DNA from: Mytilus edulis
Taxonomy: Eukaryota
Assembly (NCBI RefSeq): GCF_963676685.1
Contig: NC_092350.1
Span: 40,486,001-40,550,000 of the forward strand
Direction: 5' to 3'
Length of the DNA stretch: 64,000 nucleotides
Positions within the stretch are counted from its first letter, which is position 1. Each line of letters starts with the position of its first letter. Both the position numbers and the translations under genes were made by a program. Shown piece by piece: positions 1 to 49,127 of this stretch. Under the pieces are notes generated by a model that was not told where the DNA came from, ran no database searches, and saw only the letters and a program-made list of their open reading frames with translations.

Positions 1-763
1 GTAAAGTGGTTTCATCCACGCTGTGGTCTTCAATGATCGACTGCAGGTACGACTCAGTAGTTGCTGCTTCTGACGAGATCTTCCTCAATCCAAGGTACGT
101 TTGAAGGTCAGTACCGTACCTGTCTATGTCATGTAATTGTTTTTCAGCATGATGTGTATTAGTATTGCTGCTTTCTAGCATCTGTAATGTTTGTTTAATA
201 CTATGATTTGATTCACTTGTTATCTCGATGATTTCATTTCTTATCTTCTTTTCCAATTTATCGAACTGGTCATTAATCTTTTTCTTTGTTTCTATGATCC
301 GGGCTAAAATGTTTTCTTCCTGTCTCTCTAAACTTTCTTGTTGCTTCTTTAATTCACTTTGTAGAGTTTTGATGTTTTGATCAATATCTTTCAAGCTTTG
401 TTTTGTTTCTTGGAATAGTGACGACTTTTTAACGTTTTCTAATACCTTACTAAGGGGTACTATACCTTTGCATTCATCATGATTCTCAATACATTTCAGG
501 CAGAGAAGTTCATCGTGAGCTTTGCAAATCATTTGGTATTGTTCATTATGTTCATTGCACATATTACTCGTTTGAGAAATCGAAGACATTGCCGAGTAAT
601 CCTGAATCGATACAGTAACGTGATGTTTGGACGACCTTGAAAAGCCATGATAATCAGTACAGTCGTCACAAAATGCTTGTTCACATTCGGGGCACCAGAC
701 TGTGGATGGTTTTGTAATATGTCGATGATCACAGATATCACAAAGTTGGTGAGATGCCGCCAT
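1..763 (-). CDS. TRIM-like B-box/coiled-coil(/NHL) protein, array copy 1, partial (runs off window start)
   Basis: ATG at 763-761; open frame MAASHQLCDICDHRHITKPSTVWCPECEQAFCDDC...SEAATTESYLQSIIEDHSVDETTL continues to base 1. Paralogous to the 12577-14259 gene. Splice acceptor (ttttcag) about 10 nt upstream of the ATG. Confidence 0.9.
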   Translation of the reverse strand, partial: MAASHQLCDICDHRHITKPSTVWCPECEQAFCDDCTDYHGFSRSSKHHVTVSIQDYSAMSSISQTSNMCNEHNEQYQMICKAHDELLCLKCIENHDECKGIVPLSKVLENVKKSSLFQETKQSLKDIDQNIKTLQSELKKQQESLERQEENILARIIETKKKINDQFDKLEKKIRNEIIEITSESNHSIKQTLQMLESSNTNTHHAEKQLHDIDRYGTDLQTYLGLRKISSEAATTESYLQSIIEDHSVDETTL

Positions 764-12576: not shown

Positions 12577-14259
12577 CTAATGTATGGTTTCATATGTGAA
12601 AACAGTTTGTTGTTTGTTTGCAACCAACAGACAATTGCTTCTCCGATCGAAATGAATTGCACTAGGGTTTACCAATCCATCATCCAGAGACAACAACTCT
12701 CTGCTTTGTTGTCCATCGGGAGATATCACCACAACGCGATGTGATGTTGAACAAACAACATACACGTTTCCACTGCTATCTACTGCTAGACCACGTGGAC
12801 ATTTCAGTGTGTTCCCATCTTTAAATTTCCAGATCTGTTTGCCCTGCATGTCATAACATTTAACAGATTCATTACTAGTGTAATAGATTTTGTTATCAAA
12901 GATTTCAATGTAGGACCATGAAAGTAAATTAGACTGGACTATAACTGTACTACTTCTGTCCTGAGGGTTGAGTTTGAGAATACCAATGTTGTTTGCACAA
13001 ACATACAACGAACCATTGTGATAAATTATTCCATAGCATCTAGAGTTTGTTGATATATGCCCCGTTATCCTTTCTGTTTCAATATCGATAATATTGACAC
13101 CATTACCATTCCACAAGTTTGACGTTGTAGCTATTGTTTTATCATGTATAAACGTTACATCAAATGAATGGGCCGGTTCGACTGAGATTTTACCATGTCT
13201 TTTCCAATCAGTTCTGAAGACAGCTATATTTCCGGTAATGTAGTCACTTATTGCAATGTTTCCACTCGGTAATACAACAATTCCTCTTATGTCTAAAATT
13301 CCTATTTTTGTGGCTTTGATTAGGTTTAATTTGATATCAGCAATGGATTTTTTAATTTTTATATCCCCTAACTGGGCCTGTCTATTTTTATACCTGACGA
13401 GATCAATTTTACATAGTATTTTATGTATCGTAACTGATCCAAATTTTTTGCTGTTATTTGTAATGTTGCTTATTTTGTCATCTACTTTGAAGATCAAAGT
13501 CATTTCATCCAAGCTATGATCTCTTATGATCGACTGCAGGTACAACTCAGTAGTTGCTGCTTCTGATGAGATCTTCCGTAATCCAAGGTACGTTTGAAGA
13601 TCGGAAGCGTATCTTTCAATGTCTTTTAGTTGTTGTTCAGCATTGTTTGTGTCACCATTCTTACTTTCTAGTATCTGTAGTGCTTGGTTCATATCATTAT
13701 TTAATTTTGCTGTAATTTCAGAGACTTCATTTCTGATCTTCTCTTCTAATTTATCTAAGTGATTATTAATCTTGTTCCTTGTTTCGCTGATCTGGGACAA
13801 TATTGTTTCTTCTTGCTGCTTTATACCTCCTTGTTGTTTCTTCAATTCATTTTGTAGTATTTCTATATTTCTATTAATATCATTCAAACTGTTTTGTGTT
13901 TCTTGGAAAAGGGACGACATTTTAACGTTTTCTATAACCTTACTTATGGGTATTATACCTTTGCATCCATCATGTTTCTCAATACATTTAAGACAGAGAA
14001 GTTCATCGTGAGCTTGGCAAACCATTTGGTATTGTTCATTATGGTCCATGCATGTATTACTGGTTTGTGAAATAGATGCAGACATCGCCAAATGGTCCTG
14101 AATCGATACAGTCACGTGATGTTTAGACAACTTTGAAAATCCGTGGTAAGCGTTACAATCATCACAAAATGCTTGTTCACACTCGGGACACCAGAAAGTT
14201 GACGATTTGGTAACATGTCGTTGTTCACAGATATCACAGAGTTCCTGGGAAGCTGCCAT
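12577..14259 (-). CDS. TRIM-like protein copy 3: B-box1, B-box2, coiled coil, NHL-type beta-propeller, no RING (560 aa)
   Basis: CDIC..CPECEQAFCDDC..H..H and C..H..C..HDELLCLKC..H B-boxes; heptad region; PRGLAVDSSGNVYV NHL motif. True ATG at 14259 follows acceptor ttttgtag at ~14270; single coding exon. Confidence 0.93.
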   Translation of the reverse strand: MAASQELCDICEQRHVTKSSTFWCPECEQAFCDDCNAYHGFSKLSKHHVTVSIQDHLAMSASISQTSNTCMDHNEQYQMVCQAHDELLCLKCIEKHDGCKGIIPISKVIENVKMSSLFQETQNSLNDINRNIEILQNELKKQQGGIKQQEETILSQISETRNKINNHLDKLEEKIRNEVSEITAKLNNDMNQALQILESKNGDTNNAEQQLKDIERYASDLQTYLGLRKISSEAATTELYLQSIIRDHSLDEMTLIFKVDDKISNITNNSKKFGSVTIHKILCKIDLVRYKNRQAQLGDIKIKKSIADIKLNLIKATKIGILDIRGIVVLPSGNIAISDYITGNIAVFRTDWKRHGKISVEPAHSFDVTFIHDKTIATTSNLWNGNGVNIIDIETERITGHISTNSRCYGIIYHNGSLYVCANNIGILKLNPQDRSSTVIVQSNLLSWSYIEIFDNKIYYTSNESVKCYDMQGKQIWKFKDGNTLKCPRGLAVDSSGNVYVVCSTSHRVVVISPDGQQSRELLSLDDGLVNPSAIHFDRRSNCLLVANKQQTVFTYETIH

Positions 14260-14589
14260 CAAATATATTCTACAAAAAATAGGGAACATTTTTTTTTGTT
14301 ATACTAGATCTGAAAAATGTTCATGTCATTACACTAAGTACATTGCATATTGGTTGTTTATTTATCAATATTTTTAAAAGACTTAGATACATGATGATTT
14401 TACTAGTCTGAATAATGGGTAAAGTTCGTGATAAGACTTACCTGATAAGTACGTTATTCAGTCAAAAGTAAACTTGTCCGGTTATCTATACCAAGTTTTA
14501 TCGAAACACATCCTGTAACCCATTCAATGAAAAGGTAAATACATAGCGTTTTTGGTTTTTATCAAACTGTGGGAATCCGTGATACCGTC

Positions 14590-23601: not shown

Positions 23602-24358
23602 TTAATTTTCAACTCCATAGATGAAAATGGTTTGATTATAATTTGCAATTAAAAGACTATTGGCTTTTCTGTCGAAATGAATCGGACCAGGACTTTCCAA
23701 TCCTTCATCTTTAGACAAAAGATGTCTGTTTTGTTGTCTATCAGGGGATATCACTACGACTCGATTTAATTCTCTACAAGCTACATACACGTTTCCGGAG
23801 TTATCAACTGCTAAGCCTCGTGGACACTTCAAGATAGTCTCATCTTTAAATATCCAAACTGTCTTTCCGTCCATGTCACAACAGGTAACACTTTTAGTGC
23901 CATCGTTGGTAAAAAACATTTTATTATCAAAAATATCAATACACGACCATGACGGTAAATCAGAAATGACGATAGCTGTAGTACTGCCGTCCTGAGGGTT
24001 TATTTTGAAAATTCCCTCACTCATTGCACAAACGTACAATGACCCATCGAGGTGTTTTATTCCATAGCACTGATAGTTTGTTGGAATAAACTTTGATATT
24101 TTCTTTTCCTTAATATCGATAATACAGACGCCTTTGTGTTTGTGCAAAGGTGATGTTGCAGCTAACGTTCTGTCATCTATATATGTTATATCAAATGAGT
24201 TGGCATTATTAACTATGACTTTACTAAGTTTTACGCCGTCAGAACCAAAGATCATTACTTCCCCGTGAGAGTGAGTATAGTCACTCAAGGCGATGTTTCC
24301 GCTTGGTAGAGAAACTATTCCTTTAATGCTTTGAACTGTTGTTTTTATGGTTTTGTTT
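23602..24358 (-). pseudogene. TRIM-like copy 4: propeller-only partial duplicate of copy 5
   Basis: Near-identical to the C-terminal ~250 aa of 26187-27881 (one V/M change); lacks B-boxes, coiled coil and promoter. Confidence 0.85.
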
Positions 24359-26186: not shown

Positions 26187-27881
26187 TTAATTTTCAACTC
26201 CATAGATGAAAATGGTTTGATTATAATTTGCAATTAAAAGACTATTGGCTTTTCTGTCGAAATGAATCGGACCAGGACTTTCCAATCCTTCATCTTTAGA
26301 CAAAAGATGTCTGTTTTGTTGTCTATCAGGGGATATCACTACGACTCGATTTAATTCTCTACAAGCTACATACATGTTTCCGGAGTTATCAACTGCTAAG
26401 CCTCGTGGACACTTCAAGATAGTCTCATCTTTAAATATCCAAACTGTCTTTCCGTCCATGTCACAACAGGTAACACTTTTAGTGCCATCGTTGGTAAAAA
26501 ACATTTTATTATCAAAAATATCAATACACGACCATGACGGTAAATCAGAAATGACGATAGCTGTAGTACTGCCGTCCTGAGGGTTTATTTTGAAAATTCC
26601 CTCACTCATTGCACAAACGTACAATGACCCATCGAGGTGTTTTATTCCATAGCACTGATAGTTTGTTGGAATAAACTTTGATATTTTCTTTTCCTTAATA
26701 TCGATAATACAGACGCCTTTGTGTTTGTGCAAAGGTGATGTTGCAGCTAACGTTCTGTCATCTATATATGTTATATCAAATGAGTTGGCATTATTAACTA
26801 TGACTTTACTAAGTTTTACGCCGTCAGAACCAAAGATCATTACTTCCCCGTGAGAGTGAGTATAGTCACTCAAGGCGATGTTTCCGCTTGGTAGAGAAAC
26901 TATTCCTTTAATGCTTTGAACTGTTGTTTTTATGGTTTTGTTTAGCTTTAATGTGATATCAGCAATTGATGTTTTCATTTTTACCTCTACTATTTGAGCT
27001 TGTTTACTTTTATGCCTGACGAGAGAAGTTTGACAAGTAGTTGTCTGTACCTTTACTGGTCCAAATGTTTTGATATTATTGATAATGTTGCTTATTTTGT
27101 CATTAATTTGCAGAATCAAAGTAATTTCATCCAAGCTATGATCTCTAATGATCGACTGCAGGAACGACTCAGTAGTTGCTGCTTCTGACGAGATCTTCCG
27201 CAATCCAAGGAACGTTTGAACGTCGGTTGCATTCCTGTCCATATCTTTTAATTGTTGTTCAGCATCGTTAGTGTTACCACTCTTATGTTCTAGTATCTGT
27301 AGAGTTTGGTTCATATCATTCTTTAATTTTGCTGTAATGTCAGAGACTTCATTTCTTATCTTCTCTTCCAATTCATCTAAGTGATCATTAATCTTGTTCC
27401 TTGTTTCGCTGATCTGGGACAATATAGCCTCTTCTTGTTGCTTGATACTTCCTTTTTGTTTCGTTATTTTATTTTGTAGCATTTCTATATTTCTATTTAT
27501 ATCGTTCAAACTTTGTTGTGTTTCCTGGAAAAGTGACGACTTTTTAACGTTTTCTATAACCTTACTAATGGGTATTATACCTTTGCATCCATCATGTTTC
27601 TCAATACATTTAAGACAGAGAAGTTCATCGTGAGCTTGGCAAACCAATTGGTATTGTTCATTGTGGTCCATGCACGTATTACTGATTTGTGAAATAGATA
27701 AAGACAGCGCCGAATTGTCCTGAATCGATACAGTCACGTGATGTTTAGACAACTTTGAAAATCCGTGGTAAGCGTTACAATCATTACAAAATGCTTGTTC
27801 ACACTCGGGACACCAGAAAGTTGACGATTTGGTAACATGTCGTTGTTCACAGATATCACAGAGTTCCTGGGAAGCTGCCAT
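26187..27881 (-). CDS. TRIM-like protein copy 5 (564 aa), B-box x2, coiled coil, NHL-type propeller
   Basis: True ATG (MAASQEL) at 27881 after acceptor ttttggtag; same domain motifs as copy 3. Confidence 0.93.
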   Translation of the reverse strand: MAASQELCDICEQRHVTKSSTFWCPECEQAFCNDCNAYHGFSKLSKHHVTVSIQDNSALSLSISQISNTCMDHNEQYQLVCQAHDELLCLKCIEKHDGCKGIIPISKVIENVKKSSLFQETQQSLNDINRNIEMLQNKITKQKGSIKQQEEAILSQISETRNKINDHLDELEEKIRNEVSDITAKLKNDMNQTLQILEHKSGNTNDAEQQLKDMDRNATDVQTFLGLRKISSEAATTESFLQSIIRDHSLDEITLILQINDKISNIINNIKTFGPVKVQTTTCQTSLVRHKSKQAQIVEVKMKTSIADITLKLNKTIKTTVQSIKGIVSLPSGNIALSDYTHSHGEVMIFGSDGVKLSKVIVNNANSFDITYIDDRTLAATSPLHKHKGVCIIDIKEKKISKFIPTNYQCYGIKHLDGSLYVCAMSEGIFKINPQDGSTTAIVISDLPSWSCIDIFDNKMFFTNDGTKSVTCCDMDGKTVWIFKDETILKCPRGLAVDNSGNMYVACRELNRVVVISPDRQQNRHLLSKDEGLESPGPIHFDRKANSLLIANYNQTIFIYGVEN

Positions 27882-28616
27882 CAAATATATTCTACCAAAA
27901 AAAGGAACTTTTTTTTTCAATACTAGATGTGAAAAATCTTCATGTTATTACACTAAGTACATTATATATTGGATGTGTACTAATCCATATTTAAGACTTA
28001 TAGATACATGATGATTTTACTATTCTGAATAACTGTTCATGATAAGACTAACCTGAGAAGTATGTTATTCGGTCAAAGTAATTTTTTCAGGTTATCTATA
28101 CCAAATATTAACGAAACACATCATGTAAACCATTCAATGAAAAGGTAAATACAGCCTGATTTTGACCAAAATGTGGGAATCCGTGGTACCGTCTGAGAGC
28201 TATTGAACATCCATGTTACAGACGATATCGGATATATTCATTATGTCGTAACTACTATCCCATTCCCTTTAGCGAATGTGACCTACCAAATTTGACTATT
28301 TACCGGCTCTGTAATATCATGAACAACACAACGGGGGCCACAGGTGGAACAGGATCTGCTTACCCTTCTGGATCACCTGCGATCAACCCCAGTGTTTGAT
28401 TGGGTTTGTATTGATAAGTCTTTAGTTTTCTATGTTGTGTCTTGTGTCCTATAATTTGTCTGTTTGCCTTTTTCTTTTTTAGCCATGGCATTGTCAGTTT
28501 GTTTTCGATCTATGAGTTTGACTGTCCCCCTTGTATCTTTAGCCCCTCCTCCTCCAGTAATGTATTAAACCATAATAATTGATGGAATGTAACAGTTAAA
28601 TAACCGAAGACATCAA

Positions 28617-35908: not shown

Positions 35909-37594
35909 TTAATTTATGATTTCGTATGTACAAACAGTTTGCTTTTCATTTGCAATCAACAGACAATTGCTATTTCGGTCATAATGCATCGCAAATGGAC
36001 TTTCCAATCCATTGTCACTAGACAAAAGTTGTCTGTTTTGTTGTCCATCAGGAGATACCACTACAACTCGATGTAGTGTTGAACACGCAATGTACACGTA
36101 TCCGCTGTTATCTACTGCTATACCATGTGGATTTCTCAATATATTTTTGTCTTTAAATGTCCATATCGCCTTACCGTTCTTGTCACAACAATTCACGGTT
36201 TCAGTTTGTTGGTTTGTATAATAGATTTTATCATCAAACATTTCAATATATGACCATGAAGGTAAATCAGTCGTGATAATATCAGTACTAGCTCCGTTCT
36301 GGGGGTCAACTTTGAATATACCCATGGTAGATGCACAAACGACCAATGAACCATTGTGGTATGTTATTCCATAGCACAGAGCGATTGTTGGTATGAACTT
36401 AATTACGTTCTCTGTATTAATATCTATGATATTTACACCTTTACATGTTTCTGTACTTGACGTTGTAACTACAGTTTTATTATCAATATATGTTACATCT
36501 ACTGGAAAAGCCGACTCAAACGAGCCTGTATTTAGTATTTTCCAATCGGTACTGAATACAACTACATTTCCGCTACTGTAATCTGTTAAAATAATGTTTC
36601 CACTAGGTAGAACAACGATTCCTTTGATATTTAACAGTTTTGTTTTAATGGTTTTCCTTAACCTTAATTTGATTTCAGTGATAGATTTTAGTCTAGATCC
36701 TACCAGTTGAGCTTGCTTGTTTTTGTATGTGACGAGGGGAAGTTGAAATGGCGACTTCTGTGCCTTTATCGACCCAAATGCAGGGACTTCATCGATTATG
36801 TTGTCCATTTTGTTATCAGTTTTGAAAATTAAAGTAATTTCAGTCATGCAATCATCTCCAAAGATCGACTTCAGGTACGACTCGGTAGCAGCTGCTCCTG
36901 CCGAGATATGCCGTAATCCTAGGTACGTTTGAATGTCGGTCGCGTACATTTCAAGATCCTTTATTTGTTGTTCAGCATTTTTGGTGCTATCATTCTTGCT
37001 TTCTAGGATCTGAAGTGTTTGGTTCTTATCATAATTCAGTTTTGCTGTTACCTCAGCAACTTCATTTCTGATCTTCTTTTCCAATGTATCTAAGTGGTCA
37101 TTAATCTTGTTCCTGGTGTCGCTAATCTGGGCAAATATTGTCTCTTCTTGCTGCTTTATACTTCCTAGTTGTTTATTAAGTTCACTCCGCAGAGCTTTTA
37201 TATTACCATTTATATCTTTCAAACTGTGTTGTGTTTCCTGGAAAAGTGACGACTTTTTAACGTTTTCTATAATCTTACTTGTGGGTATTATACCTTTGCA
37301 TCCATCATGGTTCTCAATACATTTAAGACAGAGAAGTTCATCGTGAGCTTGGCAAACCATTTGGTATTGTTCATTGTGTTCCATGCACATATTACTGATT
37401 TGTGAAATAGATGAAGACAGCGCCAAATGGTCCTTAATCGATACAGTCACGTGATGTTTAGACAACTTTGAAAATCCGTGGTAAGTGTTACAATCATCAC
37501 AAAATGCTTGTTCACACTCGGGACACCAGAAAGCGGACGATTTGGTAACATGTCGTTGGTCACAGATATCACAAAGGTTATGGGTAGCTGCCAT
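35909..37594 (-). CDS. TRIM-like protein copy 6 (561 aa), B-box x2, coiled coil, NHL-type propeller
   Basis: Intact ORF with both B-boxes and PHGIAVDNSGYVY; acceptor ttttgtag upstream of the ATG. Confidence 0.93.
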   Translation of the reverse strand: MAATHNLCDICDQRHVTKSSAFWCPECEQAFCDDCNTYHGFSKLSKHHVTVSIKDHLALSSSISQISNMCMEHNEQYQMVCQAHDELLCLKCIENHDGCKGIIPTSKIIENVKKSSLFQETQHSLKDINGNIKALRSELNKQLGSIKQQEETIFAQISDTRNKINDHLDTLEKKIRNEVAEVTAKLNYDKNQTLQILESKNDSTKNAEQQIKDLEMYATDIQTYLGLRHISAGAAATESYLKSIFGDDCMTEITLIFKTDNKMDNIIDEVPAFGSIKAQKSPFQLPLVTYKNKQAQLVGSRLKSITEIKLRLRKTIKTKLLNIKGIVVLPSGNIILTDYSSGNVVVFSTDWKILNTGSFESAFPVDVTYIDNKTVVTTSSTETCKGVNIIDINTENVIKFIPTIALCYGITYHNGSLVVCASTMGIFKVDPQNGASTDIITTDLPSWSYIEMFDDKIYYTNQQTETVNCCDKNGKAIWTFKDKNILRNPHGIAVDNSGYVYIACSTLHRVVVVSPDGQQNRQLLSSDNGLESPFAMHYDRNSNCLLIANEKQTVCTYEIIN

Positions 37595-39660: not shown

Positions 39661-40383
39661 AAAGGATTAGGTCCGGTAAGGGCCGATTTTGGCCTCAAAT
39701 TTCAGGTTCATCTGAAGAAAGATTTTGACCCCTTTTTAAACGTGTCTATTTTATTTGAATCAATTAGTTTATGTGAAAGATTTTAACTGATTTATTCATA
39801 AAAAAACGCACCGATTCAAGCTGAAATATGAAAAATCTACCAAATATGCCGGAAAATGTCACTTTTCAGATGGTTTTTGTCAAAAATCAAAGTGGCCGCA
39901 TCCGTGTTCATCCTCAACCTTTTATATATGTTATGTATTATCATAAAACACAACTTACATTTCAATATTAAGGATGAACACGAATGCGGCCTTTTTCGTT
40001 TTTCACGAAAACCGTCTAAAATGTAACTAAAATGGTAGAATTATGAAGATTTCCGAGTAATTTAGCATGCCTTAATGGTGCTAGTACCCGATATATGTGC
40101 ATTGTATTGTCAAAAACAGCCCATTTTTATGTAGCAGAAGCATTTTACTGTCCAATATATAACTAACAAGAATGTGTCCTCAGTACACGAATGCCCCACT
40201 CGCACTATCCTTTTCCATGTTCAGTGGACCGTGAAATTGGGGTAAAAACTCTAATTTGGCATTAAAATTAGAAAGATCATATCATAGGGAACATGTGTAC
40301 TAAGTTTGAAGTCGATTGGACTTCAACTTCATCAAAAACTACCTTGACCAAAAACTTTTACCTGAAGCGGGACAGACGGACGA

Positions 40384-40417
<34 letters not shown>

Positions 40418-40563
40418 GAACGGACGAACGGACGCACAGAACAGAAACATAATGCCCCTCTACTATCGTAGGTGGGGCATAAAAAGTTTACATTTTTTAA
40501 AACAATTTTGTAAAACTGCTATATTTTGGGGCCAAAAAGGGGTCTTACTGGACCTACTCCTTT
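39661..40563. mobile_element. TIR non-autonomous DNA transposon (superfamily unassigned)
   Basis: Imperfect TIRs aaaggattaggtccggtaag / cttactggacctactccttt. Confidence 0.7.
40165..40485 (+). mobile_element. HINE/DINE-1-like Helentron non-autonomous element
   Basis: Sub-terminal IR atgccccac / gtggggcat, (GGAC/GAAC)n microsatellite, terminal stem-loop; second copy at 49128-49356. Confidence 0.75.
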
Positions 40564-41460
40564 GACAATTATGACGTTATAAAGAAAAAAGTTTATGTTG
40601 TTGATAAAACATAAAGTATGCAGTATTATATTTTTTCGACTAATTTCAAATTGAACTAATATAAAGAAAAGGGTATTACCGTACAAAAAATAGAGACAAC
40701 ACTTGAAAAACCTATTATATCCGAATCGCACAAGAGCCTGGCCCACCTTCAGCAGGAACGTTCACAGTCAAAAGTAAAAACAACTATGGAAGAATGCATT
40801 AATACCAATAAAATCATCATAGAATGTTGTACTAGTAGTGATTATGAATAATTTCTGAAAGCATAGTAATTATGTTACCAGTGATTCTACATAATACCTG
40901 AAAATGTCATGGCTAATACAGAATCCCTAATTATACACATTTACTTTAGCATAAATACCAAGTCCACAGCAAACCGAGACTCATCAAAAGACGCCGACAT
41001 TGAACTTATGTTGTTTCGATATAAGTTGCATCTAAAATTGATGCAAGACGTATAATAAATGTTATATAGTTGTGAATATGTTTATGGTTTCCCAGTTTGT
41101 ACTTGACATATATCATGTACTGTAGTACGCCGCTAGATTAAAACTGACGAGGAAAGGTAACACACGGCCAGCGGCGTACTACAGTACATGATATATAAGG
41201 CATGAAGATGTTATTGTTAAAGATCAGCTAAATTATCTATAGTAAAGGATCCTACAAATTAATGTAATATACAGTCACAGAAAATAATTATATTTATAAG
41301 TACGTCTGAGTCAGTGACAACTCTATAACAGATGTATCCATCGGATCGCCATCAATGATGGTGATACATGGCTGTGTACATAATGTATATACAACTCGTC
41401 TAAACATCAACCCAACAATGTTAGATCTGTAAATTTGCTTTCGCAAATTTTTTGGTTCTT

Positions 41461-41554
41461 CCCTCGCCGGGATTCGAACCCATGATACTGTGATATCGTG
41501 ACACCAAATCGCCTGCACTGCAGCCGTCCTGCTAGACCACACGACCACCTGGGC
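41461..41554 (-). promoter_or_regulatory. tRNA-derived (Leu-like) Pol III internal promoter, unit 1
   Basis: A box TGGTCGTGTGG (41547-41537), B box GGTTCGAATCC (41480-41470). Also intact at 41902-41995; A box deleted in the third unit. Confidence 0.75.
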
Positions 41555-41561
41555 TCTAAAA

Positions 41562-41606
41562 AAAAGAGCTTTCGCTGGCCGTGTGTTACCTTTCCTCGTC
41601 AGTTTT
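41562..41606 (-). ncRNA. Minimal type I hammerhead ribozyme motif
   Basis: AAAA-CUGACGA-G(gaaaggtaacacacggccag)C-GAAA-GC-UC-UUUU. Repeated at 42003-42047 and 42427-42471. Stem II is irregular. Confidence 0.65.
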
Positions 41607-42513
41607 AATCTAGCGGCGTACTACAGTACATGACATATAAGGCATGAAGATGTTATTGTTACAGATCAGCTAAATTATCTATAGTAAAGGATCCTACAAA
41701 TTAATGTAATATACAGTCACAGAAAATAATTATATTTATAAGTACGTCTGAGTCAGTGACAACTCTACAACAGATGTATCCATCTGATCGCCATCAATGA
41801 TGGTGATACATGGCTGTGTACATAATGTATATACAACTCGTCTAAACATCAACCCAACAATGTTAGATCTGTAAATTTGCTTTCGCAAATTTTTGGTTCT
41901 TCCCTCGCCAGGATTCGAACCCATGCTACTGTGATATCGTGACACCAAATCGCCTGCACTGCAGCCGTCCCGCTAGACCACACGACCACCTGGGCTCTCA
42001 AAAAATGAGCTTTCGCTGGCCGTGTGTTACCTTTCCTCGTCAGTTTTAATCTAGCGGCGTACTACAGTACATGATATATAAGGCATGAAGATGTTATTGT
42101 TACAGATCAGCTAAATTATCTATAGTAAAGGATCCTACAAATTAATGTAATATACAGTCACAGAAGATAATTATATTTATAAGTACGTCTGAGTCAGTGA
42201 CAACTCTACAACAGATGTATCCATCGGATCGCCATCAATGATGGCGATACATGGCTGTGTACATAATGTATATACAACTTGTCTAAACATCAACCCAACA
42301 ATGTTAGATCTGTAAATTTGCTTTCGCAAATTTTTGGTTCTTCCCTCGCCGCGATTCGAACCCATGCTACTGTGATATCGTGACACCAAATCACCTGCAC
42401 TGCAGCCCGCCCTGGGCTCTCAAAAAAAAAGAGCTTTCGCTGGCCGTGTGTTACCTTTCCTCGTCAGTTTTAATCTAGCGGCATACTACAGTACATGATC
42501 TATATATATATAT

Positions 42514-43270
42514 AAGTGCCTATAAAAGCTGCCAATACAAGCAGTTCTTTCATCAGCTCCGTTACTAAACAAAAATATACCATCTACTCTAATTCCAACT
42601 GTAAAACGGAGAACTCAATTTCATATTAACATGTGACACTTGTGGCATTCAGTATGTGGGAGAAACAATGGACAAATTTAATATTCGGCTCAATAACCAT
42701 CGTTCATCGTACAAAACCAACAAAAACTGTCCTCTCACAAGACATCTTCGTTCAACGAAACATCCTTTTGATAATGTTACTTTCCAAATTATAGAAGTCA
42801 ACACCGAGTGGGACACCACGGCGAGAAGGAGAAGAGAACTTTAGAACCTGATGGTCTTAACGAAAAAGACGAAAAAAGATACAGGAAAGATAAAGAATAA
42901 TTTTTATCCCGTAATATTGGCCAATGGACGTTGCTAACCCCAACTACCAATTATGTACTTTTAAGGTAGCTAAATCCTAGTGCAACATATACATTGAGCT
43001 GCAAAATTTTCTTATTTTCAAAGCAGCTAAATTCAAGTGCTCATAGACATTGAGCTTCAAAATTTTCTTATTTTAAAGGCAATTAAGTGCAACATAGACG
43101 TTGACCTGCAAAAGTTTCTTATCATCTACATCCGATTTCACCAGGATAGATGCACGCTTGATAAAGCTAGTTGGTCTAGCGAAATATTGCGTTTATTTTC
43201 ATCATTTTGTAAATATTTTAAACATTCTTATATTTACATACTAAATAGTGTGTTAAAATTACATTGTTAG
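42514..43270 (+). mobile_element. 3' fragment of a Penelope-like element (GIY-YIG endonuclease)
   Basis: NCKTENSI/LTCDTCGIQYVGETMDKFNIRLNNHRS...H...FQIIE...RRRRE/LEPDGLNE; frameshifted; bounded by (TA)n. Confidence 0.8.
43154..43192 (+). ncRNA. Variant minimal hammerhead motif of the PLE
   Basis: ACGC-UUGAUAAA-GCUAG-uuggu-CUAGC-GAAA-UAUU-GCGU: stems I and II paired, non-canonical core. Confidence 0.55.
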
Positions 43271-44718
43271 GCAATCTATATATATATATAAACGAGTCTA
43301 AATTGAAAACTACGTTCAAACCTATGATTGCGTTGGATAAAAACCGCAATTTTTTTACGTGTGCATGTAAAAAAAAATTCGGTGTAGAAGGGTCTAAAAA
43401 CAGCACAAACAACATTTTCCAAAAGACCAAAAAAGTGAAAAAGTATATTTAAACAAAACGCATTTGACTAACAGGTCGAACAACTGATGTTCTTAAACCC
43501 TGCTGACTGCCATTGGCGATTGCCAAATAAAAAATATATATATATTGTTATGCATAATGAATTTACACTGGATTTATCTATTTTAGTTCATTAACAAATT
43601 ATAGTGTTAATAAGTATCTGCAAATGAAAAGGATTTTAAAACATCCACAACAATATGAAAAAACATATGTAAAATCTTCTAATAAACAAAACTTAACTCG
43701 ATATAAAAGGAGAAAATACAAAATGACTAGGAAACTATGCAAATGCAAATGTTCTTTTATAATTGAAGGAAGCACATGATTAGTATATTATTAAGATAAA
43801 AAGGTCAAAATATTCAAGCTGGGTTTTTTCACAATTTTTTATTTGGTATAATAAATTGAATCTTTGGGAAGAACTGTTTAGTAGTTTAAGATAAGAAAAA
43901 AAAAAATAAAGGATGCAATTACAATTAATGAGTTATAGATACAGTGTTTGCAGGTTTCTTGTAACGTATGTCAAGTTTGTATTATAAGAGACATGAAGTT
44001 CTTGCAATTGTCGCGCTTGAGTTCAATTATGAATGGTGGATATCTGTTGGTCAGGCCACGAATAATGATCTGTGTCTTACATCGGCGATACCTGTAACTT
44101 GACATTGCACAAGGTCATGTTTTTCGCTGACTGTTTATGTCTTTACACTACATCCATTGGATGCTTGATGTGTACGGATTGATTGTTTAGTCTTAGATGC
44201 ATGATTTTCTTTATTAGTTGTTAGTGGCTTTGAACTAGCTGTCAGATTACTGCGAGTACTCTCAGATCTGTTCCTAGTGTCTTTTTGTTGTCGGGATGTA
44301 CAAGTACCCGGCACGTCCACTTGTATTTTTGTTCATCTGATGAGTTAAACCTTTTTCAACTGATTTTTATAGTTCTTCTTATGTTGTACTGTTATACCAC
44401 TGTCCCAGGTTATATTAGGGGAGGGTTGGGATCCCGCTAACATGTTTAAAACCGCCACATTATTTATGTATGTGCCTGTCCCAAGTCAGGAGCGTGTAAT
44501 TCAGTGCATGGTTGTCGTTTGTTTATGTGTTACTTATTTGTTTTTCGTTCATTTTTTTTATATAAATAAGGCCGTTAGTTTTTGTTTGAATTGTTGGGTT
44601 TCGTTTGTTTGCATGTCGAATATATGCGTTCGATTCATCTTCCTTATCCATTTCAAAAGAACATTGTCAGTTTATAATGTTGTTAAAACAATTGGCGTGT
44701 CTGGTTTGCATTTCATGT

Positions 44719-47481: not shown

Positions 47482-48681
47482 TCACAGATTATAACTATGA
47501 CTCTTTTTAAAACAAATAATTTTCTTAAAGATATATCTATAGCCATCCCTAAATCTTCTGTCAATAAATGCATATATGATAGGGTTCACTACATTGTTTA
47601 TGGCGAATGACCTGGATACTATTGGCAACACAGCAGACACAACAGGACCTGGTGCAAACAGGAATTTACCTTTCAAGGCCGTCAATAAAGATATCGTCAA
47701 ATGCGGCAGGTAGCTCAAAATGAAGGCGAGACTGACTGCAAATGCGATTTTAGTTAGTTTCTTCGATGCCATGTCTTCTTTTGTTGATTTTTTTCTATCT
47801 TTGATGGTTGACTTTTTCTTGTTCAATAGTTTCTTTTCACTGTGTTCCTTTTTGTCCTTTTTGTCCTCGAAAACCTCATTTTCGTATTGCTGAGAAGTAT
47901 TTACATGGTGTTGCTCATTGGAAAGTGTTGTATCAGACGTTGACTTAGACGATGACACATTAGAGAATTTCCGCCTAAACTGGATGTGTACGCAAAGTTT
48001 TCGTCCAATTAACGAGTATATAACAATCAACGATACCATACAGATAATGAAAATTAGAAACAATGTTCCACCGTACACAGTTGGGTATATTGTTTTTGCA
48101 AATTGATCCGAAAGCGAGCAATCAAATCCTGTGATATTGAGTTGTCCGAGTTTTACATGTCTTATTCCACTGATAAAGAAGTTCGGCCACGAGAACATGA
48201 ATGATAAACAGACACTAAAAAAGATGATTACCGTAGCATGGTGAGAAGTCATTTGAAGTTTTAATGGCGTAAACACACGTCGGTATCGGTCGCCTGATAG
48301 TCCCATTAAAATGAAGATCGACGACAGTGCAAAAAGGTTGTTACAGGCGCGAAAAAATTTACATGCCCACATGTTGTAAAACGTATATTGAAATCGCATC
48401 TCCGTTATCTCAAAAGGCAGAGTTACAGCACAGACAAATAAATCTGAAAGTGCCAGACCAATGATAAATGTACGATGAGTACTCTTCTGAAATCTAATAG
48501 GATAAACAATTAGAACCAAAACATTGCCTGGTATTCCAATTAACATTAGAAGTACGAGATAGATCATTGGTGCCAGTCGTCGTAAAGCTTCTTCATCATT
48601 GTAATCCTGTAAAGTTTTGTTTAAGTCGAGATCTATTATGTTGGTTACATTAAAATGTGGGATTGCTGTTGAATTATCCAT
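47482..48681 (-). CDS. Class A (rhodopsin-like) GPCR, peptide-receptor-like orphan, intronless CDS (399 aa)
   Basis: Seven hydrophobic segments; GN (TM1), LALSD (TM2), DRY, SYLP (TM6), NPIIY (TM7); N-glycosylation sequons in the N-terminus. ATG of MDNST at 48681. Confidence 0.93.
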   Translation of the reverse strand: MDNSTAIPHFNVTNIIDLDLNKTLQDYNDEEALRRLAPMIYLVLLMLIGIPGNVLVLIVYPIRFQKSTHRTFIIGLALSDLFVCAVTLPFEITEMRFQYTFYNMWACKFFRACNNLFALSSIFILMGLSGDRYRRVFTPLKLQMTSHHATVIIFFSVCLSFMFSWPNFFISGIRHVKLGQLNITGFDCSLSDQFAKTIYPTVYGGTLFLIFIICMVSLIVIYSLIGRKLCVHIQFRRKFSNVSSSKSTSDTTLSNEQHHVNTSQQYENEVFEDKKDKKEHSEKKLLNKKKSTIKDRKKSTKEDMASKKLTKIAFAVSLAFILSYLPHLTISLLTALKGKFLFAPGPVVSAVLPIVSRSFAINNVVNPIIYAFIDRRFRDGYRYIFKKIICFKKSHSYNL

Positions 48682-49127
48682 GATTTGTGAATACAACTGT
48701 ACTGTATATACACATGAAATAATATGTCCAAACTGTCACTTAGAATTTTCTTTTCTTGGATATTTCTTTCTTTTAAGACCACGTTTTAATGTCAAAAAAT
48801 GTAAATATCTATGAATGGACATACACAAGACTAAGTTAGTATTATCAATTTATGGCGCATTGTCAAACTTAAAGGCGGATGACAACAATTAAAACAATCC
48901 CAAGTGGAAGGATGATAGTTAGAATTAGTAAATTTTCCGATGAGGAAGTCACTTGTTATATGTACGCATTTGCCATAGTTTGATTATAAAATAAAGGAAA
49001 TAAATTAAAATTGAATTATCTAGTGTATTTACTGTAGATATTAAAACAATTGAATGAAATTGGCTTTCCAAAAACACAAGAGTGGAATGTGGCAAATAAT
49101 ACAAAAAGTTTTTATAGAAATATAATG

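What the first reader, a model, noticed from the sequence alone, without database searches (positions are those of the whole stretch)
41108..42499. Tandem retrozyme-like repeat coupling a hammerhead ribozyme to a tRNA-derived Pol III promoter
Seen: on the minus strand each ~441-bp unit reads AAAA-CUGACGA-stem II-GAAA-GC-UC|U-run and then, about 10 nt later, a tRNA(Leu)-like head with A box TGGTCGTGTGG and perfect B box GGTTCGAATCC. This is followed by a perfect 8-bp GAAA-tetraloop hairpin (41431-41450). An inverted partial unit caps the left end (agcg microhomology) and the array ends in (TA)n. Known: animal non-LTR retrozymes are tandem repeats with minimal type I hammerheads that cleave as dimers, give circular RNAs and are thought to be moved by Penelope elements; the schistosome Sm-alpha repeat is a precedent for tRNA-like plus hammerhead. 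Inference: this is a SINE/retrozyme hybrid carrying its own Pol III promoter. The U-run could serve as both stem I and Pol III terminator, so transcription and self-cleavage would define a unit-length RNA or circRNA. I do not recognise this family as described.
Basis: partly seen in the sequence, partly recalled or inferred. Interest (0 to 1): 0.85.

Follow-up and report, generated by a model that had tools for sequence, protein, structure and literature searches.

The report
tRNA-headed tandem retroelement, hammerhead look-alike
A 441-base repeat in a mussel-type genome is a young, heavily transcribed mobile element with a tRNA-derived promoter piece that is pasted into TA-repeats the way Penelope-like retroelements are, but its supposed self-cutting hammerhead ribozyme is a chance look-alike.

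Summary
The repeat is real: 3.1 units of 441 bp (95% alike), with an inverted partial unit at one end and (TA)7 at the other. The hammerhead is not supported. Rfam finds none even at E<=10, yet finds genuine hammerheads elsewhere in this genome. Helix II cannot form. The essential core A9 is U in 61 of 111 genomic units and in about 88% of the RNA reads. The proposed cleavage C lies in a different, covarying hairpin. RNA reads cross the site without ends. The bare string pattern occurs at chance frequency. The tRNA-derived head is supported, but it resembles the genome's tRNA-Glu(UUC), not tRNA-Leu, and the A box is TGGTCTAGCGG. The family is dispersed, with at least 353 candidate places. Its 3' ends are fixed at UA-rich sites beside (TA)n and its 5' ends vary, with a cluster just before the head. 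It forms partial tandems, inverted partial copies and tail fragments. That is the insertion signature of Penelope-like elements, and a GIY-YIG fragment of one abuts this array. I read it as a ribozyme-less, tRNA-headed non-autonomous retroelement; its reverse-transcriptase partner was not identified. Abundant strand-biased RNA has ends I cannot explain. This scan found the same family before on other DNA of this genome.

The parts
41108..42504 (-). Whole array of the 441-bp family: 3.1 units plus an inverted cap
   Evidence: TRF, unit alignment, BLAST to the family consensus
42064..42487 (-). Unit A, the degenerate one: a 19-bp deletion removes the A box and the B box is mutated
   Evidence: 93% identity to the consensus
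41623..42063 (-). Unit B, the reference unit (unit position p = 42064 - p)
   Evidence: 98.6% identity to the family consensus
41182..41622 (-). Unit C
41108..41173 (+). Inverted partial unit (unit 426-441 plus 1-50) joined to the array at an agcg microhomology; a snap-back type junction
41894..41994 (-). tRNA-Glu-like head of unit B (unit 70-170). A box at 41970-41980, B box at 41911-41921. The same head in unit C lies at 41453-41553
   Evidence: Alignment to this genome's tRNA-Glu(UUC): score 43 against shuffles 22.4 +/- 4.1
42007..42043 (-). Hammerhead look-alike of unit B (also at 41566-41602 and 42431-42467). It lies inside an interrupted inverted copy of the 5' end of the head
41994..42010 (-). 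Hairpin with a U-rich loop (unit 54-58 paired with 66-70). It contains the proposed cleavage C57 and shows C-G to U-A covariation. Also at 41553-41569
41873..41892 (-). 8-bp GAAA-tetraloop hairpin after the head (41431-41450 in unit C)
41826..41833 (-). TATATACA (unit 231-238). This is the main 3' end of DNA copies family-wide. It also lies 31 nt upstream of the RNA 5' end; the copy in unit A is at 42267-42274
42243..42243 (-). Sharp RNA molecule end (unit 262): 135 of 179 molecules in X21 and 192 of 250 in X22. It is the 5' end if the RNA is minus-sense
   Evidence: table 6
41592..41593 (-). Sharp RNA molecule end (unit 31/30): 427 of 685 molecules in X21 and 444 of 767 in X22. It is the 3' end if the RNA is minus-sense
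   Evidence: table 6
42501..42514 (.). (TA)7 shared by the 5' end of the array and the 5'-truncated Penelope-like fragment
42515..43276 (+). 5'-truncated Penelope-like element fragment. The GIY-YIG coding part is 42605-42841; the 3' UTR holds a 56-bp tandem repeat. It lies head-to-head with the array and ends at (TA)7, 43277-43290

Best explanation
The stretch is one locus of a young, dispersed, non-coding retroelement family with a 441-bp unit, in a 1.37-Gb mussel-type genome.

Anatomy of a unit:
- A SINE-like module (unit about 64-239): a tRNA-Glu-derived head with A and B boxes, a GAAA hairpin, and a short tail ending in TATATA.
- About 265 bp of extra sequence. Its last part is an interrupted inverted copy of the 5' end of the head, followed by a small conserved hairpin with a U-rich loop.

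The 'hammerhead' sits in that inverted copy and hairpin. It is a chance string match, not a ribozyme.

Proposed mechanism (inferred): a GIY-YIG endonuclease and reverse transcriptase of a Penelope-like element nicks (TA)n microsatellites. The freed TA-ended DNA anneals to a UA-rich stretch of the family's RNA, mostly the UAUAUA at unit 231-236, and primes cDNA synthesis. Synthesis stops at variable points, or at an RNA 5' end just upstream of the tRNA-like head. Template switching, or multimeric templates, give partial tandems, inverted partial copies and short tail fragments.

Shown: the anatomy, the insertion pattern, strong strand-biased transcription, and the absence of hammerhead features.
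Inferred: Pol III use of the head, the identity of the reverse transcriptase, and the priming mechanism.
For: Not a hammerhead:
- No Rfam hit at gathering score or at E<=10. RF00163 finds 34 hammerheads in this genome, 26 of them over the cut-off, each with 4-bp helix II and 6-bp helix I.
- Helix II closes with 1 bp.
- Core A9 is T in 61 of 111 units, and CTGACGT is the majority core in 18 loci against 17 for CTGACGA.
- 86-91% of RNA reads carry U there (places 41596 and 42037).
- Unit 54-68 is the least conserved part of the unit.
- C57 pairs with G67 and covaries (CG 39, UA 20).
- Unit 7-48 matches the reverse complement of the head at 75-94, with a 22-nt insert; the match is exact over 12 of 12 bases in an older subfamily.

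Head: one search gives an alignment score of 43 against shuffles 22.4 +/- 4.1 (maximum 36.5).

Insertion pattern, 76 blocks in about 50 loci:
- 42 of 73 3' ends lie at unit 231-249 (p about 4e-38); 14 more lie at the two other UA-rich sites.
- 5' ends are spread, with 10 of 70 at unit 59-70 (p = 2e-5).
- (TA)3 or longer lies within 12 nt of 43% of ends, against 3% background.
- Arrays run from 0.1 to more than 8 units. Inverted partial copies occur in the window, L011, L022, L028 and L055.
- These features match published Penelope-like element traits, including (TA)n targeting (PMC8557442).

Neighbour: a GIY-YIG Penelope-like fragment bounded by (TA)n abuts this array head-to-head, and the same layout occurs in L055.

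Expression: depth 1000-1500, with strand bias from about 15:1 to over 100:1.
Against: - No partner reverse transcriptase was identified. The 3' UTR of the adjacent Penelope-like fragment shows no significant similarity to the family.
- (TA)n could partly be an element tail rather than a target. Some copies have it only on the 3' side (L015).
- Some arrays are 99.8-100% uniform (L002, L003), so local amplification by unequal exchange also contributes or could suffice.
- The ends of the abundant RNA (unit 262 and 30/31) match neither the inferred Pol III start nor the ends of the DNA copies.
- No read pile-up marks a start at unit 59-70.
- Target-site duplications cannot be read inside microsatellites.
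Confidence: 0.6

Rival explanations
1. Each unit holds a working minimal type I hammerhead that cleaves as a dimer after C57. With a tRNA-type Pol III promoter and the U run as stem I and terminator, this yields a unit-length linear or circular RNA: a SINE/retrozyme hybrid.
For: - The strings CUGACGA, GAAA and a palindromic AGCU followed by C and a U run are present in all three units.
- Genuine hammerheads of this genome also have a palindromic helix III.
- The tandem layout and the Penelope-like context fit retrozymes (PMC7229834).
Against: - No covariance-model hit at E<=10.
- Helix II is absent, and helix I would be four A-U pairs.
- A9 is U in 55% of units, in half of the loci and in about 88% of RNA reads, so the family spread and is expressed without the core.
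- C57 is paired in a covarying hairpin.
- Reads cross the site, and no molecule ends reach a fifth of the depth there.
- The string pattern occurs at chance frequency.
Confidence: 0.03
2. An ordinary tRNA-derived SINE with a (TA)n tail, moved by a LINE. Its copies were later turned into short satellite-like arrays by unequal crossing-over or replication slippage.
For: - Solo pieces of unit 59/64/66/68 to 239 exist (L011, L028, L055, L060).
- Bivalve SINEs form tandem and palindromic structures (PMC11481361).
- Some arrays are nearly uniform.
Against: - Copies are truncated at any point of the whole 441-bp unit, not only within the 175-bp module.
- 3' ends fall at three different UA-rich sites.
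- (TA)n lies on both sides of many copies.
- Inverted partial copies and tail fragments sit in the flanks.
- No LINE-like tail was recognised.
Confidence: 0.17
3. A Helenus-type TRIM: a miniature LTR retrotransposon with a tRNA-like sequence in its LTRs. The LTR would be unit 64-238 and the internal part unit 239-63, and the arrays would come from LTR-LTR recombination.
For: - The commonest copy, [58..441][1..239], looks like LTR-internal-LTR.
- A TG...CA frame can be drawn at unit 64 and 238.
- Solo pieces resemble solo LTRs.
- Helenus families exist in Mytilus (PMC10886601).
Against: - There is no primer-binding site after the would-be LTR. Published Mytilus Helenus internal parts start TTGGCGCCC and end in a G-rich polypurine tract; this one starts TTATGTACAC and ends in a T run.
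- 5' ends are not precise.
- No 4-bp duplications are visible.
- Diagnostic words of the family are absent from the published consensus file.
Confidence: 0.05
4. A DNA-level satellite carried by a Helitron or Helentron, or by a MITE-like element. Bivalve satellites are known to travel this way, and Helitrons insert at AT sites.
For: TA-rich flanks. I recall, but did not check here, that bivalve satellite arrays are described inside Helentron-type elements.
Against: - No conserved left and right terminal modules flank the arrays; the flanks differ from locus to locus.
- The asymmetry between fixed 3' ends and variable 5' ends points to reverse transcription.
Confidence: 0.04

Closest known systems
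Animal non-LTR retrozymes (Cervera and de la Pena 2020, PMC7229834; Li et al. 2026 preprint, 10.64898/2026.07.22.740005)
   Same: Short, non-coding, AT-rich tandem repeats of 170-400 bp. They are dispersed, highly transcribed, thought to be moved by Penelope-like elements, and abundant in mussels.
   Different: Retrozymes are defined by a type I hammerhead in each unit and by circular RNA. Here the hammerhead fails every test and no circle is seen. A tRNA-derived head is not part of described retrozymes.
Schistosome Sm-alpha (a SINE-like repeat with a hammerhead; recalled from general knowledge, not checked here)
   Same: A Pol III-type head combined with a tandem or dispersed short repeat.
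   Different: Sm-alpha has an active, conserved hammerhead. This family does not.
Penelope-like elements that target (TA)n: Naiad and Neptune (Craig et al. 2021, PMC8557442)
   Same: Insertion into (TA)n, strong 5' truncation, partial tandems (pseudo-LTRs), adjacent inverted truncated copies, and short tail extensions. Naiads also lack hammerheads.
   Different: Those elements encode the reverse transcriptase and GIY-YIG endonuclease. This family encodes nothing, and shares no detectable sequence with the adjacent Penelope-like fragment.
tRNA-derived SINEs of bivalves (PMC11481361)
   Same: A tRNA-related head with A and B boxes, a simple-repeat tail, a length of 200-700 bp, and occasional tandem or palindromic arrangements.
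   Different: Those rely on LINE partners and show target-site duplications. This family shows the Penelope-type pattern, and its repeat unit is larger than the SINE-like module.
Helenus TRIMs (Kojima 2024, PMC10886601)
   Same: Terminal direct repeats containing a tRNA-like Pol III promoter. They are present in Mytilus, and tandem arrays have been reported.
   Different: No primer-binding site, no polypurine tract, no precise ends and no 4-bp duplications. The sequence is unrelated to the published Mytilus Helenus consensus sequences.

Membership tests
Hammerhead ribozyme, type I (Rfam RF00163) | Covariance-model match | tested here: not met
   No hit at gathering score or at E<=10 on 40900-42700. 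The same model finds 34 sites in this genome, 26 of them over the cut-off.
Hammerhead ribozyme, type I (Rfam RF00163) | Conserved catalytic core CUGANGA...GAAA...UH across copies | tested here: not met
   A9 is T in 61 of 111 units. CTGACGT is the majority core in 18 loci against 17 for CTGACGA. 86-91% of RNA reads carry U there.
Hammerhead ribozyme, type I (Rfam RF00163) | Helix II between the core strands; helices I and III | tested here: not met
   Helix II closes with 1 bp. Helix I would be four A-U pairs. The free-energy fold does not form the motif (z-score +1.0).
Hammerhead ribozyme, type I (Rfam RF00163) | Unpaired cleavage nucleotide C17 and self-cleavage | tested here: not met
   C57 pairs with G67 in a hairpin with C-G to U-A covariation. 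About 850-1100 reads per run cross the site, and no end pile-up is reported there. In vitro cleavage was not tested.
Non-LTR retrozyme | Short tandem repeat, dispersed, transcribed | tested here: met
Non-LTR retrozyme | A type I hammerhead in each unit | tested here: not met
   See the hammerhead rows above.
Non-LTR retrozyme | Unit-length circular RNA | tested here: inconclusive
   Only 19 and 8 'goes back 405' reads in two runs. A tandem reference cannot separate circles from multimers. Few fragments span more than the apparent 652-nt species.
tRNA-derived SINE | 5' head derived from a tRNA, with A and B boxes | tested here: met
   10 of 10 and 15 of 16 identical blocks with this genome's tRNA-Glu(UUC); score 43 against shuffles 22.4 +/- 4.1. 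The B box is 98% conserved. It is not a foldable tRNA.
tRNA-derived SINE | Pol III transcription from the head | tested here: inconclusive
   DNA copies start at unit 59-70 in 10 of 70 cases (p = 2e-5). No RNA start pile-up is seen there, and the abundant RNA reads through the T8 run. Whether these libraries keep or lose Pol III RNAs is unknown.
tRNA-derived SINE | 3' tail shared with an autonomous partner; target-site duplications | tested here: inconclusive
   No significant similarity to the adjacent Penelope-like 3' UTR. Duplications cannot be read inside (TA)n.
Non-autonomous passenger of Penelope-like elements | Microsatellite (TA)n target | tested here: met
   (TA)3 or longer lies within 12 nt of 30 of 70 5' ends and 31 of 73 3' ends, against 62 of 2040 background.
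Non-autonomous passenger of Penelope-like elements | Fixed 3' end, variable 5' truncation, partial tandems, inverted truncated copies, tail fragments | tested here: met
Non-autonomous passenger of Penelope-like elements | Shown dependence on a Penelope-like reverse transcriptase | not testable with these tools
   Only adjacency to GIY-YIG fragments could be shown: in the window, L047 and L055.
Helenus TRIM (LTR retrotransposon) | Primer-binding site and polypurine tract next to the LTRs; precise ends with 4-bp duplications | tested here: not met
   The sequence after unit 238 and before unit 64 lacks both signals, whereas the published Mytilus Helenus sequences have them. 5' ends are scattered. 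Family words are absent from the published consensus file.

The most novel reading that the evidence does not exclude
This family is a 'SINE' of Penelope-like elements. It would be a Pol III-headed, ribozyme-less counterpart of retrozymes, copied into (TA)n by microhomology priming on internal UA-rich RNA sites. That priming produces partial tandems in a single insertion step. It would show that passengers of Penelope-like elements need neither a hammerhead nor sequence shared with their partner.
Probability: 0.4. Interest if true: 0.6.

Novelty: new variant of a known kind. Interest (0 to 1): 0.4.

Why it matters
If the reading holds, passengers of Penelope-like elements are not limited to hammerhead-bearing retrozymes. 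A tRNA-promoter module can fill the same niche. The hammerhead would then not be needed for tandem, Penelope-style copying.

The 3' ends at every UA-rich site of the unit give a concrete, testable picture of how a (TA)n-cutting endonuclease primes reverse transcription.

There is also a practical lesson. String-level hammerhead matches in AT-rich repeats occur at chance frequency. They need helix, conservation and RNA-end tests before being called.

Tried and rejected
- Rfam at both thresholds and ARAGORN gave no hammerhead and no tRNA.
- A descriptor scan of both strands of the circularised unit found no other hammerhead candidate.
- Genuine hammerhead loci L031-L036 share nothing with the family.
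- A word search of the paper library with three family-specific sequence words found nothing.
- The Helenus/TRIM reading was rejected for lack of a primer-binding site, a polypurine tract and precise ends.
- I sought the partner through 3' similarity to the adjacent Penelope-like 3' UTR and to the neighbouring repeat Y. Neither is significant; only a short shared tail motif, TTTAGAC..GTT(TA)n, links the family to Y.
- ORFs in the flanks of 60 loci yielded one GIY-YIG ORF (L047) and unrelated genes.
- The long stem between unit 7-49 and unit 74-94 is 89-98% paired, but it varies mostly on one side or breaks. I read it as a decaying inverted duplication rather than a selected structure.
- The strand of the RNA could not be checked on a control gene.
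Full report
**The observation**

Tandem Repeats Finder reports a 441-bp period, 3.1 copies and 95% matches at 41170-42504. Read on the minus strand, the three units are A (42064-42487), B (41623-42063) and C (41182-41622).

- CTGACGA...GAAAGCTC followed by a T run in each unit.
- GGTTCGAATCC in units B and C.
- A perfect 8-bp GAAA hairpin at 41431-41450.
- An inverted partial unit at the left end, with 27-nt arms that are 100% complementary.
- (TA)7 at 42501-42514.

Unit A has lost the A-box region through a 19-bp deletion, and its B box is mutated.

**The hammerhead fails every test I could run**

1. Rfam finds nothing at gathering score in the window, and nothing at E<=10 on 40900-42700. The same Hammerhead_1 model finds 34 sites in this genome, 26 of them above the curated cut-off. 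These have a 4-bp helix II, a 6-bp helix I and a palindromic helix III. The model therefore works on this genome.
2. The 22 nt between CUGACGA and GAAA close with a single pair. Helix I would be four A-U pairs. The free fold does not form the motif.
3. Across 111 units from about 40 loci, the essential A9 is T in 61. CTGACGT is the majority core in 18 loci against 17 for CTGACGA, so both variants spread equally well. The stretch at unit 54-68, which holds the proposed cleavage site and the T run, is the least conserved part of the unit.
4. The bare string pattern is expected 1.04 +/- 0.92 times per shuffled window. The three matches here are one repeated occurrence.
5. In stranded RNA-seq, 86-91% of reads carry U at A9. 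About 850-1100 reads per run cross the proposed cleavage site, and no pile-up of ends is reported there.

**What the look-alike region really is**

Unit 7-48 matches the reverse complement of the 5' end of the tRNA-like head (unit 75-94). The match is CCGCTAGA, then a 22-nt insert, then CACACG(A/G)CCA. An older subfamily matches 12 of 12 bases in the second block. The CTGACG(A/T) string lies in the insert.

Directly downstream, unit 54-58 pairs with unit 66-70 around the U-rich loop. In 66 distinct copies this hairpin is 94% paired. Two of its pairs change on both sides: C-G 39 against U-A 20, and U-A 30 against C-G 9. The proposed cleavage nucleotide C57 is one of these paired bases, which does not fit the hammerhead fold.

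The longer stem, between unit 7-49 and unit 74-94, is mostly paired. It varies on one side or breaks, as a decaying inverted duplication would.

**The tRNA-derived head is real, but Glu-like**

A pattern search turned up an array of more than 60 tRNA-Glu(UUC) genes on contig C11. The head aligns to this tRNA over TGTGGTCTAG (10 of 10) and the T-arm block (15 of 16). The score is 43, against 22.4 +/- 4.1 for shuffles, with a maximum of 36.5 in 500.

The middle of the head is expanded, and the head no longer folds as a tRNA. The A box is TGGTCTAGCGG.

**The family**

The genome has 1.37 Gb and 14 large contigs. It holds at least 353 candidate places for the unit.

In 76 blocks from about 50 loci:
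- 42 of 73 3' ends lie at unit 231-249 (TATATACA), 9 at unit 325-340 and 5 at unit 424-432. These are the three UA-rich sites of the unit.
- 5' ends are spread over the whole unit. They cluster at unit 59-70 (10 of 70, p = 2e-5), which is 9-18 nt upstream of the tRNA-like +1. They also cluster at the unit's own TATATA near position 425.
- (TA)3 or longer lies within 12 nt of 43% of the ends, against 3% of random 12-mers in the same loci.
- Blocks range from 34 bp to more than 3.4 kb. The commonest complete form is [58..441][1..239].
- Inverted partial copies and 10-35-nt tail fragments sit in the flanking (TA)n (L011, L022, L028, L029, L055, and this window).
- Identity within arrays runs from 90% to 100%.

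A fixed 3' end, variable 5' truncation, partial tandems, adjacent inverted truncated copies, tail extensions and (TA)n targets are the published hallmarks of Penelope-like elements. This holds notably for Naiads, which also lack hammerheads, and for Neptune (PMC8557442).

**A Penelope-like fragment touches this array**

On the plus strand, 42515-43276 is a 5'-truncated element piece:
- It contains a GIY-YIG coding stretch at 42605-42841. This is 96% identical in protein to the ORF L047:2899-3444, which passes Pfam PF01541.
- Its 3' UTR contains a 56-bp tandem repeat.
- It ends at (TA)7, 43277-43290.

The fragment and the array meet head-to-head at the (TA)7 of 42501-42514. L055 shows the same layout with different truncation points. 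This shows that a (TA)n-targeting Penelope-like element has acted at this very site. It does not prove co-mobilisation. The fragment's 3' UTR has no significant similarity to the family.

**RNA**

Two stranded raw-read runs (X21, X22) cover the family at depth 1000-1500, from about 6% of each run. Reads whose first mate lies on the plus strand outnumber the others from about 15:1 to over 100:1. By the usual convention the RNA is then minus-sense, the same sense as the tRNA-like head. I could not verify the convention on a control gene.

About three quarters of the reads carry the variants of one subfamily, also seen in L013, L025 and L026.

Molecule ends pile up at two places:
- 42243 (unit 262): 135 of 179 and 192 of 250 molecules.
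- 41592/41593 (unit 31/30): 427 of 685 and 444 of 767 molecules.

Read placement argues for a species of about 652 nt, [262..441][1..441][1..30].

TATATACA lies 31 nt upstream of unit 262. AUUAAA lies 11-12 nt upstream of unit 30/31, but no poly(A) loose ends are listed. These ends match neither the inferred Pol III start nor the ends of the DNA copies. The RNA also runs through the T8 tract, so this abundant species is not a Pol III product terminated there. Circle-type joints are few. This RNA remains unexplained.

**Proposed mechanism**

A GIY-YIG endonuclease nicks (TA)n. The TA-ended DNA anneals to a UA-rich site of family RNA and primes cDNA synthesis. Synthesis ends at the RNA 5' end near unit 59-70, or earlier. 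Multimeric templates or template switches give tandems and inverted pieces, and later local exchange can lengthen arrays.

The pattern is shown. The enzyme, the template and Pol III use are inferred.

**Rivals**

- A Helenus-type TRIM would explain the repeat-internal-repeat form and the solo pieces. But there is no primer-binding site, no polypurine tract, no precise ends and no 4-bp duplications, and the published Mytilus Helenus sequences are unrelated.
- A LINE-driven SINE with later satellite-like growth cannot be excluded. It fits the truncation pattern, the three alternative 3' sites and the inverted pieces less well.

**Known or new**

The held literature describes hammerhead retrozymes as passengers of Penelope-like elements (PMC7229834; preprint 10.64898/2026.07.22.740005). 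It describes LINE-dependent tRNA SINEs in bivalves (PMC11481361) and tRNA-bearing TRIMs (PMC10886601). I found no description of a tRNA-headed, ribozyme-less passenger of Penelope-like elements.

This scan had already met the same family at least five times on other DNA of this genome. Its follow-up notes reached the same overall reading. I saw those notes after forming mine, and they are not independent evidence.

- The RNA-level test of A9.
- The RNA ends.
- The origin of the look-alike region as an inverted copy of the head.
- The covarying hairpin that contains C57.
- The tRNA-Glu assignment.
- The exclusion of the TRIM reading.

Noticed in passing
window 43291-43526: A repeat of about 240 bp ('Y') with (TA)n on both sides. 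Its minus-strand 3' end, TTTAGACTCGTT(TA)n, resembles the family tail TTTAGACGAGTTG(TA)n. Copies lie within 1.5 kb of family arrays in at least 9 other loci (L011, L014, L015, L029, L038, L042, L045, L057 and others). It may be a second passenger of the same machinery.
   Followed up: partly
window 42959-43122: A 56-bp tandem repeat, 3 copies, inside the 3' UTR of the Penelope-like fragment.
   Followed up: no
window 12577-14289, 23602-24288, 26187-27920, 35909-37594 (all minus strand): Four uninterrupted ORFs with B-box and NHL-repeat matches: a local cluster of TRIM-NHL-like genes or pseudogenes.
   Followed up: no
window 47482-48696 (minus strand): An uninterrupted 404-aa ORF with a rhodopsin-family 7tm_1 match, E = 1e-32. 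A similar GPCR ORF lies beside a family copy in L046.
   Followed up: no
G000 contig C11, about 38.67-38.80 Mb (example L064:94-166): More than 60 identical tRNA-Glu(UUC) genes in a tandem array with a period of about 1.1 kb, about 1.4-1.5 kb in part of it.
   Followed up: partly
L031-L036 (for example L031, around position 1500): Genuine type I hammerheads of this genome with a palindromic helix III. They are not in 350-390-bp tandem repeats at these six loci.
   Followed up: partly
window 40370-40434: A GGAC/GAAC-type microsatellite with 4- and 20-bp periods.
   Followed up: no
family-wide, unit 95-135: Many copies carry different short deletions between the A and B boxes, often between short direct repeats. 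This makes the head length highly variable.
   Followed up: no
run X24 against X21 and X22: Family RNA is 30-50 times lower and unstranded in X24. There, 63% of what was laid (by the tool's count) continues for 20 or more letters into sequence unlike this stretch. Expression therefore looks dependent on tissue or library.
   Followed up: no
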